Shown here in pieces: positions 15,968 through 42,430 of a stretch of DNA of 64,000 nucleotides. The notes beneath the pieces are model-generated. The model worked only from the letters and a program-made list of their open reading frames with translations. It made no database searches and was not told where the DNA came from. Positions within the stretch are counted from its first letter, which is position 1. Every line of letters starts with the position of its first letter. The translations under genes were made by a program, and so were the position numbers. This DNA comes from Selaginella moellendorffii. Lineage: Eukaryota > Plantae > Lycopodiophyta. The stretch lies in contig NW_003314280.1 in the NCBI RefSeq assembly GCF_000143415.4, forward strand, positions 2,091,549 to 2,155,548. The letters are read 5' to 3'.

Positions 15968-16086
15968 GGCGCGACGCGACGCGATGGGAAAGAAAAATCG
16001 AGGAAATGTGGGCGCGCTACTAAATTTACTAACAAGCAAAGGTCTTAAATATTTGGTCCACGGCGGGGATTCTCAACTATAGTCCG

Positions 16087-16248
16087 ACGTGGCCACTACG
16101 GTACCGAGGTGGCGGTCCCGAGCCGCCTTTTCCCTTCATATCATCGGGACGATTCCGTAGGTTCGCGGATGAAAAGCCGGGAATATGTCATGTCCATGTG
16201 GCACGTGCCCGGCACACGCCACCATGCGCTGCCGTGTGCCAACGTGGC
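16087..16248. promoter_or_regulatory. ABRE/G-box cluster upstream of SLC19-like copy 1
   Basis: ACGTGGC 16087, CACGTG 16202 and ACGTGGC 16242, all within 300 bp of ATG 15967. Confidence 0.45.
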
Positions 16249-16418
16249 GCCAAAATGGAAAGTTTGGATTGGTGAAGGAACGGTTGGAATCGCCTTAGTT
16301 TAGATTTCTGAAGAAGTTTTTTCCTTGTGTGGGAGAGATGGCAATCGATCAAGGGACGCAAGAGGTGGTGACAGCGTGGCCACAATGACCACAACTTGAG
16401 GTTGGGTGACCATTAACA

Positions 16419-18352
16419 CTTATGCTTGGTTATTTTAGAATATTTTTAATTGATAAACATGTTTATAATTCATAAACTTTCCTAAACACTTTCTAGTATA
16501 TTCTAGTATATTTTACCATTTAATGGTTTATATACAATAAGATTAGTTTTGTGTTATAAATTAGATTTTTTAAAAAACTTTTTATAATTTATACTCCAAA
16601 ACTATAAAGTAGAATTAGACTGAAATCTTGATTACTATAATCATGCAATCTAATTACATAAAAATACATAATTACATAGTTATAAAAATTATTTATTATA
16701 GAAATCAGTAATCAAATATAAATTAGACCTTTTACCAAACTTTATTTTAAAATATAATCATTTTTCCTCCCACGGTTAAACTATAAATATTTTTTTTAAA
16801 AGCTTTAAAATATGTGTAGAAGTTTACTGCATTTACTTATCATCATCATAGGAATTTAAAATATACTTTATTTATTAAATAATTATAATTAGATTGTATT
16901 AAAATTATAGATATAAATTACACTTGAAGAGAAATAAAAAATTTATACATAAACAATAATACATCAAATTTTGTATATAAACTAAAATGAACAAACAAGT
17001 TTTTACATTAAATTTTAAGTAAAAAAAATTTAATCTTATCTGAAATATTCAAGACAAAAGAAACTTAAAAATAAAATTTTTACAAGGAAAATAAATAAAA
17101 TCAATAATTAACTAAAATAAACCTTTCAAAACATGTAATTTAGTTAAAATTAAATAAAAATAATAATATAATTTTAAAGTTAATATTAATTTTTAATATA
17201 TTTTATAATAAATCCTATTTGTATAGTGTGTAAAGGGCTTTTACAATTCATAAATTTCAATAAAGATGTCAAAAAATCTTGATTTCTATGTTAAAATTGT
17301 AGTTAAAGTGATCAAATTAACCATAGGTTATTGGCTACTAGGTGATCCGTTACTTCAATGAAAAATAACATCATTATTAAATATTAATTAATTAGGGGTT
17401 TATGTGTTACATTATACTTATTTATGCATATAGATTTAAAATTTAAATTTGGTCGTATGGCCATAAATTTACATTTAAAAAAATCCACCAAAATTTTATC
17501 ATTTATCATCATGCTACAAAAGAATGTTTTTTATACTAAAATAATTTTTAAAATATGTAATCTATATAATTTTAAAATATAAAAATTTAAAATAAAAAAC
17601 CTTTCAAGTTTTATATTATGTTTAAATTTCTTTCTTCCACTTATCAATTAGTTAAATTTTACAATTTATTAAAAAAAAAGTTAAAATTTTATTTTAATAC
17701 TTGACTTATAATGGTGTTAATTTAAATAGAACATACTCATTAAATTCTCAAGCCCTTTCAACAAACGTGAGCGTTAAGTGATTGATTGTGCCGAACCAGT
17801 AAACCCTAAACTCTAAACCTAGTTGGATTGTTTAGTATTAGTAATAATTCAGTTGATAAATTATATTTTAATTAAAGAATTGAACTTTTTTTGTTTAAAA
17901 CAAATTTTATATGAAGTTGGAGAAATATTTAAGCATAAAGATAAACCACTTTAAAATAAATATTATTATATTATATTTATTGTATATATATACATTGGAT
18001 ATATGTCAAAATAAAATTTAGTAAGAGTTCCAAAAACTTACTTAAATAGTGATTTTTCTATTATACTTCACAAAAAACTTTCTAAGATGCAACTACTTTT
18101 TTTTGTATAATAAATTTGTTTTTATAGTATTTATATTGTAAGTGATTATAATCCAATTGTACTCTTTTATACTTTGGAGTGTTAGAGTATAAGTTTCATT
18201 TACAAAATATGTACATGATTGTGTTTATATAAAAAAAATTATATAATTTTTTCATTATATTAAAGAATAAACTAAGAAGTGTTTAGGGGAGTTTATATGA
18301 GTTATAAAAATGTTTAAAAATTATAAATACAAAATTAATTTAAATACATAAC
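16419..18352. mobile_element. Very AT-rich non-coding insert with long degenerate terminal inverted repeats (foldback/Mutator-like non-autonomous element)
   Basis: Left AAACATGTTTATAATTCATAAACTTTCCTAAACACTTTCTAGT approximates the reverse complement of right ACTAAGAAGTGTTTAGGGGAGTTTATATGAGTTATAAAAATGTTT. A second matching block pairs ~16593 with ~18150-18180. Abrupt GC drop and no ORFs. Confidence 0.6.
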
Positions 18353-27537: not shown

Positions 27538-28680
27538 ATGGCATACAAATGCCGCCGCCGCCACTGGCCACTGCTTGATCTCATCGCGATCGCTTTATTC
27601 TGCCATGGAGCAAAATCCGAAATGTCTTCCCCGCGGCAGGAAGATCGGTGCTCCACCGATGGTTTGCTCCGAGAATTCGAGCACTGCGTGGCCTTGGGAG
27701 CGCAGGGTGCGTTCCTGGCGTGGAATTTCTTCGCCCAAAACCAGAGCTTGGATCTGGCGTTCTCGGGTGAGTCCCCGGGCTGGGCTGGATGGGGCTACAA
27801 TCCAACCGGGGACAACATGATCGGCAGCAGCGCTCTCATCGCCTTTGGAAACGCCACTGGAGCTCACCTCCATCTCTACAGCATCACCAGCGAGACCTAC
27901 ACGTACCGCTCGCTTCATCCCTCCGCCTCCAATTCCACCCCGGATCTCCAGCTCGCGAGAACAAACTGGATCAAAATCTCTGGAGCGAGCATCCAGTTCT
28001 CCGCCAGGATCAAGTTCCGCTCCAATTCCTCCAGGATCTTCCACATCTGGACGCGAGGAACAGGAGTCAACGGCGATTCACCGCTGCCGCACAGTGTCAC
28101 CCGATCGAGCGAACTGCGAGGGCGAGGGACGCTCGATCTCGCCAATGGAACTGGCGTCCTTGGCAAGGCTCCAAGCCTGGCGCTTAAGATCACACACGGA
28201 TTGCTCTGCGCCTCCTCGTGGGGATTCCTTTTGCCGCTGGGAGCGATCGCGGCGCGATACCTCCGGCGATTCGATCCGGCCTGGTTCTATGCCCACGAAT
28301 GCTGCCAGGGGCTAGGGTTCTTGCTGGGCACCGCCGGCTATGGCATCGGCCTGAGCCTGGGAGCCAAATCTACGGGGATCGAGTACACCACTCACCGCAG
28401 GATCGGCATCACCGTCTTCACCTTGGGATCACTCCAAGCGATCGCGTTCTTCCTCCGCGCCAAGAAGGATCACAAGCTCCGCTGGCTGTGGAGCCTGTAC
28501 CACCGAACCGTGGGCTACACCGTTATCGCCCTGTCGATCGCCAACGTCTTCGAGGGATTAGACATCTTCTCACCGGAGAGAGCGTGGAGAAGAGCCTACA
28601 TTGGCGTGATCGCTGGGCTGGCCTCCATGGCCGCCCTCCTGGAAATCGCAAGAACTCTAAAACCCCAGCTATTTGGCTGA
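27538..28680 (+). CDS. DOMON domain + cytochrome b561 protein (CYBDOM), intronless
   Basis: Signal peptide; GWAGWGYNPTGDNMIGSSALIAF (DOMON); HGLLCASSWGFLLPLGAIAARY, WFYAHECCQ, HRRIG and YHRTVGY carry the heme-ligand His residues. Confidence 0.93.
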   Translation: MAYKCRRRHWPLLDLIAIALFCHGAKSEMSSPRQEDRCSTDGLLREFEHCVALGAQGAFLAWNFFAQNQSLDLAFSGESPGWAGWGYNPTGDNMIGSSALIAFGNATGAHLHLYSITSETYTYRSLHPSASNSTPDLQLARTNWIKISGASIQFSARIKFRSNSSRIFHIWTRGTGVNGDSPLPHSVTRSSELRGRGTLDLANGTGVLGKAPSLALKITHGLLCASSWGFLLPLGAIAARYLRRFDPAWFYAHECCQGLGFLLGTAGYGIGLSLGAKSTGIEYTTHRRIGITVFTLGSLQAIAFFLRAKKDHKLRWLWSLYHRTVGYTVIALSIANVFEGLDIFSPERAWRRAYIGVIAGLASMAALLEIARTLKPQLFG

Positions 28681-29085
28681 TGGTTAACCAAGGGGAAAAA
28701 TAGCTTAAAGGAAAACCACTCCTTGTTTTGATTAAATTATTCTGCGAATGTTACATGGTATATGTGTTTAACTAAGGGGGGAATATAACTTATTTATACA
28801 CCGTCGGATGCGATCAAAACCCACACGAGGTGAAGATCTCATCGTTGGTGTGAAAGTAACAATTGTTTACGTTGGGCTGGCACCTTGCTACCCAGCTACA
28901 CACGCAGCTTAACCGGCCTCCGGTGGCACACTCCACGTAGGGTCCGTGCGAGCACGTCGGAGGCGTGGAGCACACTGCTTTTATTCCAATTTACACCAAG
29001 GCTCTAGTAGCTAGTCAATGAGCGTGGACTAAGAAGGAAGACGACGACGAAGACTAGGTTATAAGAGAGTGGGCTGACCGCGAAT

Positions 29086-30072
29086 CTAGTACGTACCATC
29101 CGTTGCTTGGAGCAGGCGACGGTTGTGATATGCGCTGACCGGCGTGGCGGCGCCGCCGTTGACCTTTTCTTCTCCCATGGTGTAGGAGGTGGTGGGCGCC
29201 TGGGCCTCGAAGGAGGCGCTGGGCGAGATCTGCTGCTCATGGTACGCGGCCACTGGGGAGATTTGATCGAGATGGAGGGAGGAGACCGGCACCTGGGCGA
29301 GGAGGTCCTCGCTCAATCGGCGATCCATCTTGAGCGACGCGGTCGGGGCGAGCTGATCGGGGTGGTGATCCATTCCCACGCTCGCGGCGGGGGCCTGCGA
29401 TCGATCGAAGTACATGTTCTCGAAGGACGCGGTGGGAGTGATGCTCTCCCTGGGGATGTGGTTGATCCCGCGGGATGCGACCGGAGCTTGGGCGGCGATG
29501 AAGTTCCTGCGCTCCTCGCGGGTCATCCCCATCATGGTGTCGAGCTCGCGATCGAGATTGGCGAGGGAGACGGTGGCCGGCTTGAGCGACGCGGTGGGAG
29601 CTTGCGAGATCTCCTCGATGTTCATCCGGCCTCTGTTCATGCCAAAGGAGGAGGTTGGTGCCTGGGACTCCCTCTCCATCGCCACAGGGACTTGCGCCGC
29701 CGCCTCCCAGTTCTCCATTCCAAATATCCTGGAGGCTGTGGGAGCTTGCGCCGCTGCCTCCCACTTCTCCATTCCAAAGTTCTTGGAGGCGGTGGGAGCT
29801 TGCGCCTCGCGGTAGAAGGCGGCGGTCGGCACTTGGGCTCTCTCGCGGATGGAATCATAGCCGAAGGACGCAGCGGGGGCTACTTGCTCTGGCTCGTACG
29901 AGGCCACTGGAGCTTGATCCAAGTTAGACAATGCCTCTGGAATTCACACACGATCAGCACAGTTCTTTCTCTTCTCCATCGAGGAGCAATCCGATCGAAG
30001 GGGCAGCTTACCCGAGAACCGCATCACCAGAGCAATGCTCAAGAGAGCAAAGACCAGCTTGGAGCTCCTCAT
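29086..30072 (-). CDS. Unknown secreted Cys-free repeat protein (~303 aa, ~17 QAPTAS-like motifs)
   Basis: Exon 1 30072-30012 encodes the signal peptide MRSSKLVFALLSIALVMRFS. Intron 30011-29937 (GTAAGC...TTCCAG). Exon 2 is in frame to the stop at 29086. TATAAAA lies ~90 bp upstream. Confidence 0.85.
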
Positions 30073-30370: not shown

Positions 30371-32152
30371 ATGGAGGAGGAGCGCGGGGGAAGCGATGGC
30401 GGCTTGCGCGGCAGCGCTGTGGCATTGATGTGCGTCTACGCGTTTTGTCTCCAGTTCACGCCGTCGGAGCCATACCTGGTGCCATTTCTCACCAAGGTGA
30501 AGGGATTCAGCAATAATGTGGTAAGAATTAGCTTAATCAGCTAGAGTGTGGCTCTGGGAATTCGATCGCTCACGAGGATTGAGCCACACTCGCAGGTCAC
30601 CACCGAGATTTTTCCAGTGTCGGTGTACTCTACGCTGGTCTTTACGCTTCTAGCCGCGCCTGCGTGTACTTATCTCAAGTATCGCTCGGTCATTTTGATT
30701 GGTACGTGAGTGAGTGTTTCGTTTTGATGATTCACAGTGCTCGGTTCTTCCAGGTACTTTAGGTCGTTTGTCGACGTTTTTTATCCTTCTTTTCGGAAGA
30801 TCATTGCTCTCAATGCAGCTTATGCAGGTTTGTGACAACCTCAGAGAATTTTGAGTTTTAGTTCTGATGTGTTTCCTTGTTTTTCTTTCTAGGCTACGTA
30901 TGCGTTGGGAGTCGCCAGCGATCTCGTTTTTTCTTCCTACCTTTTTGTTCTCGTCAAGGAGAACATGTATCAGTCGCTGGTACGTGCGCACAATTTTGAG
31001 AAAAGTTCTTAGTTTCTTTTGGGAACTACAGACTAGTTTCACTCAGGCCTCATCCACATTTTCTTTTTTCATTGCTGCTGAGCTAAGTAGGTCCGGTCAG
31101 TGGGATCTCTAGGAACTGACTGGTTATATTTCCTTTCCTTTTCTCAGGTCAGCTCCTCGTTTCGGAGGGGGTTAACTTGATCGTTCTACTGTACATTTCA
31201 ACGTGCATGGTATCCATGGATAGAAATGTTCTCGGAAGATTGTGCTGACGATTTGCATCTGTGCTAGGTTGCACTTGCGTTGGTAGCATGCGTTTTTCTT
31301 CCGGTGGAAATGCGACACTGGATCGATGTATCTAGCTTGGGAGACTTGGAACTGGACTGGGAAACTCCTACTTCTTCCTGTCAGGTATGGCATATCGTAG
31401 ACGGCCTTCGGCTTCCCCACTTACAACGACGTTTGGTCTTAGAACTTCGTGGAATTGGTGAAAGCTACCTGGAGCAATCGAAGTCTACAACTACTGTCTC
31501 TCTGGTGGGTTTAAGATGTTCTTAGATGACTTAACCACGCATCGTTTTTTGTAGGTGGGCTTTTCAGCTAGGCGGCACGGCGATGATCGAGAATTACGGC
31601 ACGAATCTGTTCGATGCTGTCGATCCAACGTCCATCTACAACGGCCATGTCATTGCTGCAACGCAAGGGGCGTCTTGTGTTGCAGCTCTCATCGCTGTTC
31701 CAGCTTCTCGCTACACGTCAAAGGCTGGTGGTCTGCTCTACGCCGGAGGATCTGGACTGACATGGCTGCTGTGCGTTGTACTGTCCCGCTCCAAGTCCTT
31801 GTGGATCGTGCACGCAGCATACATCTTGTGTGTTGCTCTGAACAAGTTCCTTCTTTGCATCCTCTACGTCCAATGCGCTCGGTTTCTCTCTCACGGCCAC
31901 TTTATTTTCTTGTTCAGCCTCAATGCTGTGGCAGCTCTGCTTGTCCAATCCTCTCTCCAGGCGTTCGTGGTACGTTTCGATTTGTTTCTGTGCCTGACCA
32001 GTTTCCTTTTCTCGTTTCTGCAGGAAGTCCTGAACGCCAACTTGTCCGCTCAGTTCTACTATGTTGGAAACTATTTTCTAGTGCTAACCATTGTCTTTGC
32101 TGTGCTTGTGAAGGCATACTATCAATCGAGCAATGCTACATTACTTCGTTAA
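30371..32152 (+). CDS. Reduced folate carrier / SLC19 (folate-thiamine transporter)-like MFS protein, copy 2
   Basis: CVYAFCLQFTPSEPYLVPFL..KGFSNNV|VTTEIFPVSVYS..YLKYRSVILIG resembles SLC19 TM1-3; also LLSLW|WAF, IYNGHVIA, FLFSLN. Confidence 0.82.
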
Positions 32153-38016: not shown

Positions 38017-40911
<2,895 letters not shown>

Positions 40912-41049: not shown

Positions 41050-42129
41050 CTAGAAGTGTAGCACGGCTCCCTGGCAGTGGTAAAACGTAAGCAGCAGCGC
41101 TCTATACAACTGCCTGGAGTTCTTCAAATCGGTCACGTCCTCTCCGCCTTTGCTGGTGACGAAGAACGCATCGTTTCTAAACAACACGGCGGACGAAGAA
41201 TTGGAGCCGAGATCCAAGCTTGACAACGACGATGGCGACGAGGCAGCGAACGGGAGAAAGTAGCGCGACACGATCCCGACCTCCTTCCAACCGTGTTCTT
41301 TGTCATCGTCAAGCCTCCCCACGTACCCAGCCTGATTGATCACGTATAAGTGATCGCCAGTCGCCACGAACTCGCCCTCGCGGAGATTTCCCTCCAAACT
41401 TCTCTCGAGTTTCCACCGCCCGGTGTCGCTGCTGCTGCTGCTGCTGCCACTACTCCTGGGATCGAAAACGAGCACCCTCCTGTTCCTGCCGGCCCGCCCC
41501 TTGACGTAAAGTTTGCTCTGGAACACCGCGAAGCTCTCGATGTGGTTGAAGCCAAACGGCATCGATTCCAGCAGCGTCCACTTGTCCAGCTCGCTGTCGT
41601 AGGCCTCTGTACTTTGCTCGTTGTCGCAACCACCGGCAACGTACAAGGTCCCCTCGATGAAACCGCACGCAAAGTAGGACCTTGCGATCTTCATCCTGGA
41701 TCCGGTCGTCCATCTGCTCGTCGCCGCGTCGAAAATGGTCACTTCCGAGTGGTTTTGAAACTCTATCCCATCGTGACTGGCCGACGATCCCCCGAGGACG
41801 AACAGGCGGTGACCCTGGCTCGCACAGCCGACTCCCATCAGGTCCAAGTGTTTCTCTGCTTCCATCGGGCCTTTGATCCTGTGGCTGGCGGCCGAGTTGA
41901 AATCATAAGCGAGGAGCCGGGCGGACTTGTGCAAGCGGGAGTTCCTTGGTACAACGAGGACCAGCCAGTCGTCCACGAGGAGGTGCCTCTGGCGCAGGAG
42001 ATAAAACTGCTTGCTGCTCACGAGCTCGTTCCAAGCCTTGGAAACGCATCGGATCCTGAGAAGGGAGAACTTTGGCAGCCGAATCAAGCACTGGAGCGCT
42101 ATGTCATCTGGGAGACCGGGTATCACCAT
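41050..42129 (-). CDS. F-box/kelch-repeat protein
   Basis: IPGLPDDIALQCLIRLP...VSKAW F-box; kelch motifs LFVLGG and MKIARSYFACG..LYVAGG..EAYDSELDKW. Confidence 0.92.
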   Translation of the reverse strand: MVIPGLPDDIALQCLIRLPKFSLLRIRCVSKAWNELVSSKQFYLLRQRHLLVDDWLVLVVPRNSRLHKSARLLAYDFNSAASHRIKGPMEAEKHLDLMGVGCASQGHRLFVLGGSSASHDGIEFQNHSEVTIFDAATSRWTTGSRMKIARSYFACGFIEGTLYVAGGCDNEQSTEAYDSELDKWTLLESMPFGFNHIESFAVFQSKLYVKGRAGRNRRVLVFDPRSSGSSSSSSDTGRWKLERSLEGNLREGEFVATGDHLYVINQAGYVGRLDDDKEHGWKEVGIVSRYFLPFAASSPSSLSSLDLGSNSSSAVLFRNDAFFVTSKGGEDVTDLKNSRQLYRALLLTFYHCQGAVLHF

Positions 42130-42430
42130 GCTGTGCAAAAATGAATCATCTGCTGCCTGCCGTGAGATGAGAGGAGTGAATCTTGCTCTTCCTAACTTGC
42201 AACTTCGGAAAAGAAGAAATTTGTACCTGTCAGTCTACCTGAATTTGCTCGTCAGTGACTGGTTGGTGCAATTGCGCGTCCAGAGCCAAGGACAGCAACG
42301 GGTGGAGCTACGAAGGTCACGTTACTAGGAAGGAGCGTTGACAAACTCACTGGAACAAAAAAGTTTAGCGAAAGAAAGTTCGACGAGAAGAAAAGAGTAA
42401 AGAGAGAAAAAAGAAAGCTAAAAGCTCTTT

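What the first reader, a model, noticed from the sequence alone, without database searches (positions are those of the whole stretch)
29086..30072. Secreted multi-repeat protein resembling a multi-core peptide precursor
Seen: a signal peptide, no Cys, and ~17 copies of a (Q)-[AVIS]-P-[TVAS]-[AST]-[SA] motif often ending in F/Y/L (QAPVASY, QVPTAAFY, QAPTASL, QISPVAAY, QAPTTSY, TPVSAY). Variable charged, Met-rich spacers separate them, and a C-terminal RRLL precedes QATDGTY. Known: RRLL is the SBT6.1/S1P cleavage motif; repeated short cores are the architecture of multi-domain peptide-hormone and plant RiPP precursors (DUF2775 repeats end in PxxxAY-like tails); N-terminal Gln can form pyroglutamate. 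Inference: an undescribed family of processed apoplastic peptides. An alternative is a non-classical arabinogalactan protein with isolated Hyp sites.
Basis: partly seen in the sequence, partly recalled or inferred. Interest (0 to 1): 0.75.

Follow-up and report, generated by a model that had tools for sequence, protein, structure and literature searches.

The report
Spikemoss cysteine-rich peptide precursor, glycosylation-repeat propeptide

Summary
The gene lies on the minus strand of Selaginella moellendorffii and is annotated as SELMODRAFT_413107. The repeat motif is real: 14 strict and about 17 loose copies, against 0.25 expected in shuffles.

"GTY-stop" is read-through into a 122-nt GT..AG intron. 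A third exon (28974-28814) adds a 52-residue domain with 8 Cys that ends in CGF. Five observations support it:
- the other haplotype's annotated model uses it;
- two intron-less cDNA-like contigs from a related plant join the repeats to this domain;
- a phase-1 intron sits just before the first Cys in Selaginella, Diphasiastrum, Ceratodon and Physcomitrium;
- between haplotypes, indels break the frame in the intron but stay in frame in exon 3;
- all 8 Cys are kept.

The Cys domain defines a family of roughly 100-aa secreted precursors in mosses and lycophytes. It has no Pfam model, no PDB relative and no name. Nearly all members carry RRxL or RxLx, the S1P/SBT6.1-type cleavage motif, upstream of the first Cys.

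The repeats match the experimentally derived Hyp-arabinogalactosylation sequon (14 sites against 0.3 by chance).

Best reading: a cysteine-rich peptide released at RRLL from an AGP-like, O-glycosylated propeptide. The multi-core reading is unlikely. All of this is computational.

The parts
30012..30072 (-). Exon 1: ATG plus signal-peptide-like N-terminus (MRSSKLVFALLSIALVMRFS, first base of the Glu codon)
   Evidence: Identical to the start of database proteins P0001 and P0002. The FSEA junction is also present in cDNA-like contig L004. The signal peptide was judged by eye only.
29937..30011 (-). Intron 1 (75 nt, GTAAG..CCAG, phase 1)
   Evidence: An in-frame stop lies in the read-through. Both public models remove this intron, and it is absent from cDNA-like L004.
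29097..29936 (-). Exon 2: Cys-free, probably disordered repeat region (residues 21-300)
   Evidence: The ESM Atlas model of the whole protein has mean pLDDT 0.32. No Pfam family matches. pN/pS between haplotypes is 0.24, from 7 nonsynonymous and 9 synonymous differences.
29131..29916 (-). Array of about 17 Q-[AVS]-P-x-x-[SA]-[FYL] motifs, read here as candidate Hyp-arabinogalactosylation sequons
   Evidence: 14 strict motif copies against 0.25 in shuffles. 16 of 21 Pro fit [AVSTG]P[AVSTG][GAVPSTC][APSDE], against 0.7 by chance. 14 fit the stricter [not basic][not T][AVSG]P[AVST][GAVPSTC][APS], against 0.34. The sequon wording is quoted in PMC5266747 and PMC5651053.
29687..29806 (-). Recent 54-nt tandem duplication (QAPTAS[KR][NI]FGME[KN]WEAAA, 2.2 copies, 89% match)
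29110..29121 (-). RRLL, a candidate S1P/SBT6.1-type cleavage site five residues before the first Cys
   Evidence: Equivalent RRxL or RxLx sites occur in the homologues. Motif specificity is taken from PMC13082318.
28975..29096 (-). Intron 2 (122 nt, G|GTACGT..AAGCAG, phase 1).
   Evidence: Between haplotypes this stretch carries 11-nt and 2-nt indels. The same phase-1 intron precedes the first Cys in Diphasiastrum, Ceratodon and Physcomitrium. It is absent from cDNA-like L003 and L004.
28814..28974 (-). Exon 3: 8-Cys C-terminal domain (CSTPPTC...SCGF, 52 aa) plus stop codon
   Evidence: Intact ORF. 94% identical to the tail of P0002. Only an in-frame 3-nt indel and 2 substitutions separate the haplotypes. 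Homologues were found. The AlphaFold2 model has pLDDT 87.5.

Best explanation
This is a three-exon minus-strand gene of Selaginella moellendorffii. It encodes a 353-codon secretory pre-pro-protein with four parts.
1. A signal peptide.
2. A disordered propeptide of about 275 residues that carries about 14-17 Hyp-arabinogalactosylation sequons (Q-A-P-T-A-S-F type).
3. An RRLL site.
4. A C-terminal part of about 57 residues that contains an 8-Cys, disulfide-rich domain ending in CGF.

The Cys domain is the conserved, functional unit. It belongs to an unnamed family of small secreted cysteine-rich peptide precursors found here only in mosses and lycophytes.

Inferred mechanism. In the ER and Golgi, the prolines in the sequons are hydroxylated and O-glycosylated. 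A site-1-protease-type subtilase then cuts after RRLL, as it does in RALF23 and pectin methylesterases. This releases a mature peptide that starts with Gln and could cyclise to pyroglutamate. That peptide would act in the apoplast, more likely as a ligand than as a cationic antimicrobial, because its net charge is about -3. The glycosylated propeptide is a Selaginella-lineage elaboration that may control solubility, trafficking or wall retention before release.

What is shown: the gene structure, the family, the motif statistics and the conserved basic-x-Leu site. What is inferred: hydroxylation and glycosylation, cleavage, and ligand function.
For: Gene model.
- The other haplotype's database protein P0002 (354 aa, 98% identical) continues into the Cys domain.
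- Exon 3 is intact in the window.
- Intron 2 has canonical GT..AG ends and frame-breaking indels between haplotypes. Exon 3 has only an in-frame indel, and all Cys are kept.
- Contigs L003 and L004 (JGI samples) encode signal peptide, repeats and Cys domain with no introns.
- A phase-1 intron lies at codon -1 before the first Cys in Selaginella, Diphasiastrum and Ceratodon, and at codon -3 in Physcomitrium.

Family.
- phmmer of P0002 against 1.84 billion representatives gave only P0001, P0003, P0004 and P0005.
- Profile searches added Physcomitrium, a second Diphasiastrum gene, a Ceratodon tandem paralogue and unnamed moss-like sequences.
- The 8 Cys, GG, P-x-V and C-terminal CGF are invariant.
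- A Physcomitrium member lies on an RNA-like Logan contig.
- The domain model has pLDDT 87.5.

Cleavage site.
- R[RS][LFI][LQK] lies 2-20 residues upstream of the first Cys in 9 of 10 sequences. Chance per sequence in shuffles is 0.2-4%.
- RRxL, RxxL and RxLx are the AtS1P/SBT6.1 and SBT3.5 motifs (PMC13082318).

Repeats.
- 14 strict AG sequons against 0.34 by chance.
- 16 of 21 Pro lie in sequon context.
- The sequon wording is quoted in PMC5266747 and PMC5651053.
- Motif windows are 50% identical to the Selaginella-like relative, against 26% for spacers.
- pN/pS is 0.24.
Against: - There is no S. moellendorffii transcript spanning the exon 2-exon 3 junction. The public model for this very haplotype (P0001) stops in the intron.
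- No protein-level data exist for cleavage, Hyp, glycans or disulfides.
- The pattern R[RS][LFI][LQK] was derived after seeing the sequences. One Physcomitrium gene has only RELR. In the Selaginella-like contigs the site is RRLQ or RSLQ, not RRxL.
- PAST content is 37-39%, so the window's protein fails the Finding-AGP thresholds for a non-classical AGP. The sporamin-derived rule does not predict Hyp in all wall proteins (PMC5651053).
- The motif is more specific than the sequon requires (Q at -2, F/Y/L at +4). Something beyond glycosylation may be selected, or the units may simply share ancestry.
- The function of the Cys domain is unknown.
Confidence: 0.6

Rival explanations
1. Intact chimeric glycoprotein. 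The protein is not cleaved. It works as a wall or apoplast protein in which an O-glycosylated AGP-like stalk presents or tethers the C-terminal Cys-rich domain, as in non-classical AGPs with Cys-rich C-terminal domains.
For: The repeat motif matches the AG sequon. The Selaginella-like relative P0006 passes the Finding-AGP thresholds: PAST 47%, and a 102-aa region with 19 glycomodules. The site in that relative is RRLQ or RSLQ, which is weaker than RRxL.
Against: The basic-x-Leu site recurs between propeptide and Cys domain across mosses and lycophytes, including short precursors that have no stalk. The window's protein fails the AGP composition thresholds.
Confidence: 0.25
2. Multi-core peptide precursor. 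Each Q-A-P-x-x-S-[FYL] unit is excised and modified (pGlu, Hyp, possibly cyclised) to give many short apoplastic peptides.
For: The motif is strongly over-represented and is better conserved than the spacers. Q at -2 and an aromatic residue or Leu at +4 go beyond what the AG sequon needs. The region is under purifying selection.
Against: Spacers vary from 4 to 33 residues, and by inspection no recurrent flanking cleavage motif appears. In the relative the units abut with a period of about 10. Pfam finds no BURP or DUF2775 domain. The +4 residue is F, L or Y, not a fixed Tyr or Trp. The repeats are missing from all moss and clubmoss homologues, where only the Cys domain is kept. The whole-database search found no other protein with these repeats.
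Confidence: 0.08
3. The annotated 303-aa Cys-less protein (P0001 model) is the true product in this haplotype. Intron 2 is retained and exon 3 is unused.
For: The public annotation of this scaffold stops at the TAG in intron 2. No transcript was available for this species.
Against: Exon 3 is intact with all 8 Cys and only an in-frame indel against the other haplotype, whereas the intron has frame-breaking indels. The intron position is conserved in four lineages. cDNA-like relatives join the repeats to the Cys domain.
Confidence: 0.05

Closest known systems
RALF precursors (for example AtRALF23)
   Same: Signal peptide, then a propeptide, then an RRxL site cut by S1P/SBT6.1, then a C-terminal disulfide-bonded peptide of about 50 residues (PMC13082318).
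   Different: Here there are 8 Cys, not 4. There is no YISY motif, no RALF Pfam match and no sequence similarity. The propeptide is very long and full of glycosylation sequons. The family was found only in mosses and lycophytes.
Chimeric and non-classical arabinogalactan proteins; the sporamin-derived Hyp-AG sequon (Shimizu et al. 2005, as quoted in PMC5266747 and PMC5651053)
   Same: Secreted, Ala/Ser/Thr/Pro-biased and disordered, with non-contiguous [AVS]-Pro sites that fit the sequon. A folded Cys-rich domain sits at one end.
   Different: PAST is only 37-39%. Sites lie 9-38 residues apart, so the protein fails the Finding-AGP thresholds. No GPI signal is present. Its Cys domain is not a PAC/Ole e 1, FAS1, plastocyanin-like or nsLTP domain (no Pfam hits).
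Multi-core peptide precursors (BURP-domain RiPP precursors, multi-CLE proteins, the moss SHORT-LEAF repeat protein; recalled from my own knowledge, not tested here beyond Pfam)
   Same: A signal peptide followed by many copies of a short motif.
   Different: No BURP domain, no conserved flanking cleavage sites and no fixed Tyr or Trp. The repeats are lineage-specific, whereas the conserved element is the Cys domain.
Other plant cysteine-rich peptide families with 8 Cys (EPF/EPFL, defensins, nsLTP, hevein, MEG)
   Same: Small, secreted and C-terminal in the precursor, with an even number of Cys.
   Different: The Cys spacing is C-x5-7-C-x7-8-C-x7-C-x-C-x5-C-x6-C-x11-13-C-G-F, with no CC pair. 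Pfam shows no match. Foldseek's best E-value is 4.9 and the best VIA Z is 3.4. Physcomitrium 'MEG' peptides have 12 Cys and two CC pairs (bioRxiv 10.1101/2024.05.13.593875).

Membership tests
RALF | RRxL (S1P) site directly upstream of the mature peptide | tested here: met
   RRLL lies five residues before the first Cys. The motif definition comes from PMC13082318.
RALF | RALF domain (Pfam), YISY motif, four Cys | tested here: not met
   No Pfam hit at E<=10. The domain has 8 Cys and no YISY.
Arabinogalactan protein (non-classical or chimeric) | N-terminal signal peptide | tested here: inconclusive
   The basic n-region, hydrophobic core and S-E-A cleavage context were judged by eye. No predictor was available.
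Arabinogalactan protein (non-classical or chimeric) | Composition and glycomodule density. Finding-AGP thresholds for PAST <42%: at least 5 glycomodules in one region, GlycoIndex >=0.20, regional PAST >=60% (PMC5266747). | tested here: not met
   PAST is 37-39%. The best region in P0001 has 5 glycomodules, index 0.22 and PAST 57%. P0002 has no region with 5 or more. The relative P0006 does pass.
Arabinogalactan protein (non-classical or chimeric) | Pro in the experimentally derived AG-glycosylation sequon | tested here: met
   14 strict sites against 0.34 in shuffles, and 16 of 21 Pro in the looser form.
Arabinogalactan protein (non-classical or chimeric) | Hyp-linked type II arabinogalactan; Yariv reactivity | not testable with these tools
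   This needs biochemistry.
BURP-type RiPP precursor / DUF2775 organ-specific protein | BURP or DUF2775 domain; cores with a fixed Tyr or Trp | tested here: not met
   No Pfam hit. The +4 residue in 16 motifs is F5, Y4, L3, R2, K1, V1.
EGF-like domain (UniRef label of P0002) | EGF Pfam or fold match | tested here: not met
   No Pfam EGF hit. No EGF entry among the fold-search rows.
nsLTP / bifunctional inhibitor superfamily (UniRef label of P0016) | 8-Cys motif with CC and CxC; four-helix fold | tested here: not met
   No CC pair. The model is hairpin-helix-hairpin. No Pfam hit.
Unnamed moss/lycophyte 8-Cys 'CGF' peptide family (defined here) | C-terminal domain of 52-54 aa with 8 invariant Cys, GG, P-x-V and terminal CGF; a phase-1 intron just before the first Cys; an upstream RxLx/RRxL site; a signal peptide | tested here: met
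   Alignments. tblastn of moss and clubmoss members to exon 3 gave E 1e-8 to 1e-11. Introns. Site.

The most novel reading that the evidence does not exclude
A dual-output precursor. S1P-type cleavage releases a new kind of 8-Cys apoplastic ligand, from a family kept in mosses and lycophytes and not detected in seed plants. The Selaginella-specific propeptide is itself cut into many pGlu/Hyp-modified Q-A-P-x-x-S-[FYL] peptides with their own activity. One gene would then yield both a cysteine-rich and a post-translationally modified peptide class.
Probability: 0.07. Interest if true: 0.8.

Novelty: new variant of a known kind. Interest (0 to 1): 0.55.

Why it matters
Peptide-ligand families of non-seed plants are poorly charted. 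The catalogues I could read list RALF, EPF/EPFL, TAX, MEG and TPD, but nothing with this Cys pattern.

Here a conserved 8-Cys domain defines a candidate new family. It has a conserved intron, a conserved subtilase-type site and at least one moss member on an RNA-like contig. The family can be tested genetically in Physcomitrium, which has two small genes.

The Selaginella member joins such a peptide to a propeptide made almost entirely of spaced AG-glycosylation sequons. That makes it a natural test case for how O-glycosylation of a propeptide affects peptide maturation.

The work also corrects a public gene model: EFJ26703.1 is truncated relative to its allele EFJ26991.1.

Tried and rejected
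- Pfam gave only sub-threshold noise for the repeat exon, exon 3, P0002 and all family members.
- PDB sequence searches with exon 3 and with the family profile found nothing credible.
- The ESM Atlas gave no feature hit, and its structure hits had TM below 0.5 on a model with pLDDT 0.32.
- Fold searches with the pLDDT-87.5 domain model: Foldseek's best E-value was 4.9, the best Z in VIA-wide was 3.4, and the VIA re-look at Foldseek's matches found nothing. No known fold is assigned. Small disulfide-rich domains are hard to match, so this does not prove a new fold.
- The word search with the repeat exon was swamped by low-complexity candidates and missed P0003, which the exhaustive search later found.
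- Literature look-ups by locus tags, accessions and sample ids returned nothing relevant. The AGP survey's supplements do not list 413107 or 412555.
- No paralogue of the Cys domain lies elsewhere in the window.
- Rejected as families: DUF2775, BURP RiPP, RALF, EPF, MEG, nsLTP and EGF membership (see Membership tests).
- Not done: the three exons of the window's own allele were never joined. They were searched by reference exon by exon, and the other haplotype's database protein P0002 stood in for the whole product.
- Disulfide pairing could not be read because model coordinates are not exposed.

Full report
**What is at the coordinates**

The interval 29086-30072 is read on the minus strand. 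Translation gives a signal-peptide-like start, an in-frame stop, and then a long Cys-free repeat region. The stop lies in a 75-nt GT..AG intron (30011-29937), which leaves exon 1 at 30072-30012 and exon 2 starting at 29936.

The word search with the repeat exon, given by reference, returned a 100% match. It is the 303-aa hypothetical protein SELMODRAFT_413107 of Selaginella moellendorffii (EFJ26703.1, P0001). The window is therefore spikemoss nuclear DNA, which agrees with earlier scan notes on the same window.

**The repeat observation**

The motif is real.
- [AVIS]P[TVAS][ASTV][SA] occurs 14 times in 280 residues, against a mean of 0.25 and a maximum of 3 in 5000 shuffles.
- With the leading Q it occurs 13 times, against 0.02.
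- Degenerate copies (QVPVAM, TPTAS, TPVSA, KPATVS) bring the total to about 17.
- Spacing varies from 9 to 38 residues.
- One 54-nt unit is a recent tandem duplication.
- No Pfam family matches the repeat exon.

**The gene model is truncated**

The 90% cluster of P0001 also holds P0002 (EFJ26991.1, 354 aa), which comes from the other haplotype scaffold. It is 98% identical over residues 1-300, but it replaces the terminal "GTY" by a 54-residue tail with 8 Cys. In the window the same tail is an intact ORF at 28974-28814. The sequence GAT G|GTACGT...AAGCAG|TG TGC gives a canonical phase-1 intron of 122 nt (29096-28975).

Five independent lines favour splicing.
1. Between the two haplotypes, the intron carries 11-nt and 2-nt indels. 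Exon 3 has only an in-frame 3-nt indel plus two substitutions, and keeps all Cys.
2. Two contigs from JGI samples (L003 and L004, 1.4 kb) encode signal peptide, repeats and the same Cys domain in one uninterrupted frame. They lack both introns and so look like cDNA.
3. Moss and clubmoss homologues hit exon 3 by tblastn at E 1e-8 to 1e-11.
4. A phase-1 intron lies in the codon just before the first Cys in Selaginella, Diphasiastrum and Ceratodon, and two codons further upstream in Physcomitrium.
5. GC content drops from 0.63 and 0.57 in the exons to 0.46 in the intron.

Each exon was searched by reference, and P0002 served as the whole-protein stand-in.

**The conserved unit is the Cys domain**

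An exhaustive phmmer search of P0002 against 1.84 billion representatives gave only four hits:
- P0001, the other haplotype's allele;
- P0003, the 434-aa cDNA-like protein with repeats plus the Cys domain;
- P0004, 110 aa, from Diphasiastrum complanatum;
- P0005, 98 aa, from Ceratodon purpureus.

Two profile rounds added more members:
- Physcomitrium patens LOC112283947;
- a second Physcomitrium gene (P0016);
- a second Diphasiastrum gene;
- a Ceratodon paralogue lying in tandem (L010 2501-3519 and 4801-5525);
- several unnamed moss-like sequences.

All named members are "hypothetical" or "uncharacterized". One Physcomitrium member sits intron-free on a Logan contig of run SRR1588582.

The alignments show 8 invariant Cys, GG, P-x-V and a C-terminal CGF. 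Further searches gave no assignment.
- Pfam finds nothing for any member.
- PDB sequence searches find nothing.
- AlphaFold2 with the 9-sequence alignment gives a confident hairpin-helix-hairpin model (pLDDT 87.5).
- That model has no convincing match: Foldseek's best E-value is 4.9 and the best VIA Z is 3.4.
- The automatic labels "EGF-like" (P0002) and "bifunctional inhibitor/LTP" (P0016) are not borne out.
- The domain also differs from the Physcomitrium "MEG" peptides, which have 12 Cys and two CC pairs.

I found no paper that names this family.

**The cleavage site**

A basic-x-Leu site lies upstream of the first Cys in nearly every member:

| Member | Site and following residues |
|---|---|
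| Window gene | RRLL\|QATDVC |
| Diphasiastrum | RRFL\|QPWMC and RRLL\|LPWMC |
| Ceratodon gene 1 | RRIL, then RRLL\|DAVS... |
| Ceratodon gene 2 | RSLL\|Q... |
| Physcomitrium gene 2 | RSLK\|QTC |
| Selaginella-like contigs | RRLQ\|G and RSLQ\|G |
| Physcomitrium gene 1 | only RELR\|H |

The pattern R[RS][LFI][LQK] is present in 9 of 10 sequences. Chance per sequence in shuffles is 0.2-4%. I derived this pattern after seeing the data. The a-priori motif RRxL is present in four genes of three lineages.

RRxL, RxxL and RxLx are the recognition motifs of AtS1P/SBT6.1 and SBT3.5, for example in RALF23, CLEL6 and PROSCOOP12 (PMC13082318). Several members would begin with Gln after cleavage, so an N-terminal pyroglutamate is possible (inference).

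**What the repeats are**

The motif coincides with the sequon for efficient Hyp-arabinogalactosylation derived from sporamin mutagenesis. Two papers quote that sequon:
- [AVSTG]-P-[AVSTGA]-[GAVPSTC]-[APSDE] (PMC5651053).

The counts are as follows.
- 14 sites in P0001 fit the strict form, against 0.34 in shuffles.
- 16 of 21 prolines fit the looser form, against 0.7.
- The Selaginella-like relative has 17-18 such sites.

By composition the window's protein is not a textbook AGP. PAST is 37-39%, and it narrowly fails the Finding-AGP thresholds. The relative passes them.

The region is under purifying selection between haplotypes (pN/pS 0.24 from 7 nonsynonymous and 9 synonymous differences). 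Motif windows are 50% identical to the relative, against 26% for spacers. Repeat alignments inflate that contrast. It also does not separate "core peptide" from "glycosylation sequon".

Against the multi-core reading:
- the spacers are variable and, by inspection, lack recurrent flanking cleavage sites;
- the residue after the motif is F, L or Y and is not fixed;
- no BURP or DUF2775 domain is present;
- the repeats are absent from every moss and clubmoss homologue.

The extra conservation of Q at -2 and of an aromatic residue or Leu at +4 is not explained by the sequon. This keeps a small probability for that reading.

**Mechanism proposed**

- Shown: the three-exon structure, the family, the conserved intron, the conserved site and the sequon statistics.
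- Inferred: co-translational secretion; prolyl hydroxylation and AG O-glycosylation of the propeptide; S1P-type cleavage after RRLL in the Golgi; release of an oxidised peptide of about 57 residues with four disulfides.

Net charge of the domain ranges from -3 to +3 across the family and is about -3 here. That argues against a classic cationic antimicrobial and mildly favours a ligand role.

**Surroundings**

The neighbours are a DOMON/DUF568-cytochrome b561 gene (27538-28680, +) and a folate-carrier-family gene (about 30371-32152, +). It is about 8 kb away, and I found nothing that links it to this gene.

**Verdict**

This is a new variant of a known kind: an RRxL-processed cysteine-rich peptide precursor from an unnamed moss/lycophyte family. 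In Selaginella it is fused to an AGP-like propeptide made of repeated sequons. Everything here is computational. The decisive tests are junction-spanning RNA reads and secretome mass spectrometry.

Noticed in passing
window 28814-30072 (-) compared with L001 3001-4271: The two haplotype annotations of one gene disagree. EFJ26703.1 (this scaffold) stops inside intron 2 at 303 aa. EFJ26991.1 (the allele) splices to the 8-Cys exon and has 354 aa. The exon is intact in both, so the difference lies in the models and not in the DNA.
   Followed up: yes
window 38020-40121 (-): ORF pieces of a plant subtilase on the minus strand: Peptidase_S8 at 39489-40121, PA domain at 38862-39332, Fn3-like at 38020-38625. 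Its type (S1P-like or not) was not determined, and no link to the repeat gene was found.
   Followed up: partly
window 41053-42138 (-): Single-ORF F-box/Kelch-repeat protein.
   Followed up: no
window 27538-28680 (+): Single-exon DOMON (DUF568) plus cytochrome b561 protein, tail to tail with the repeat gene and about 130 nt from its stop codon.
   Followed up: no
window 16001-18000: A sharp AT-rich stretch (GC 0.25) in a window that otherwise averages about 0.49. Not examined.
   Followed up: no
L010 2501-3519 and 4801-5525 (Ceratodon purpureus chromosome 6): Two members of the 8-Cys family lie in tandem about 1.3 kb apart. They represent the two moss subtypes (CLGVGPVC... and CWPGMRLNC...).
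   Followed up: partly
L003 and L004 (JGI samples 3300046470 and 3300046759): Two near-identical cDNA-like contigs differ at the putative cleavage site (RRLQ against RSLQ) and in repeat number (434-aa partial against 446 aa). The architecture suggests another Selaginella-like lycophyte.
   Followed up: partly
P0002 and P0016 (database labels): The UniRef labels 'EGF-like domain-containing' and 'Bifunctional inhibitor/plant lipid transfer protein...' for family members are not supported by Pfam or by the predicted fold.
   Followed up: yes
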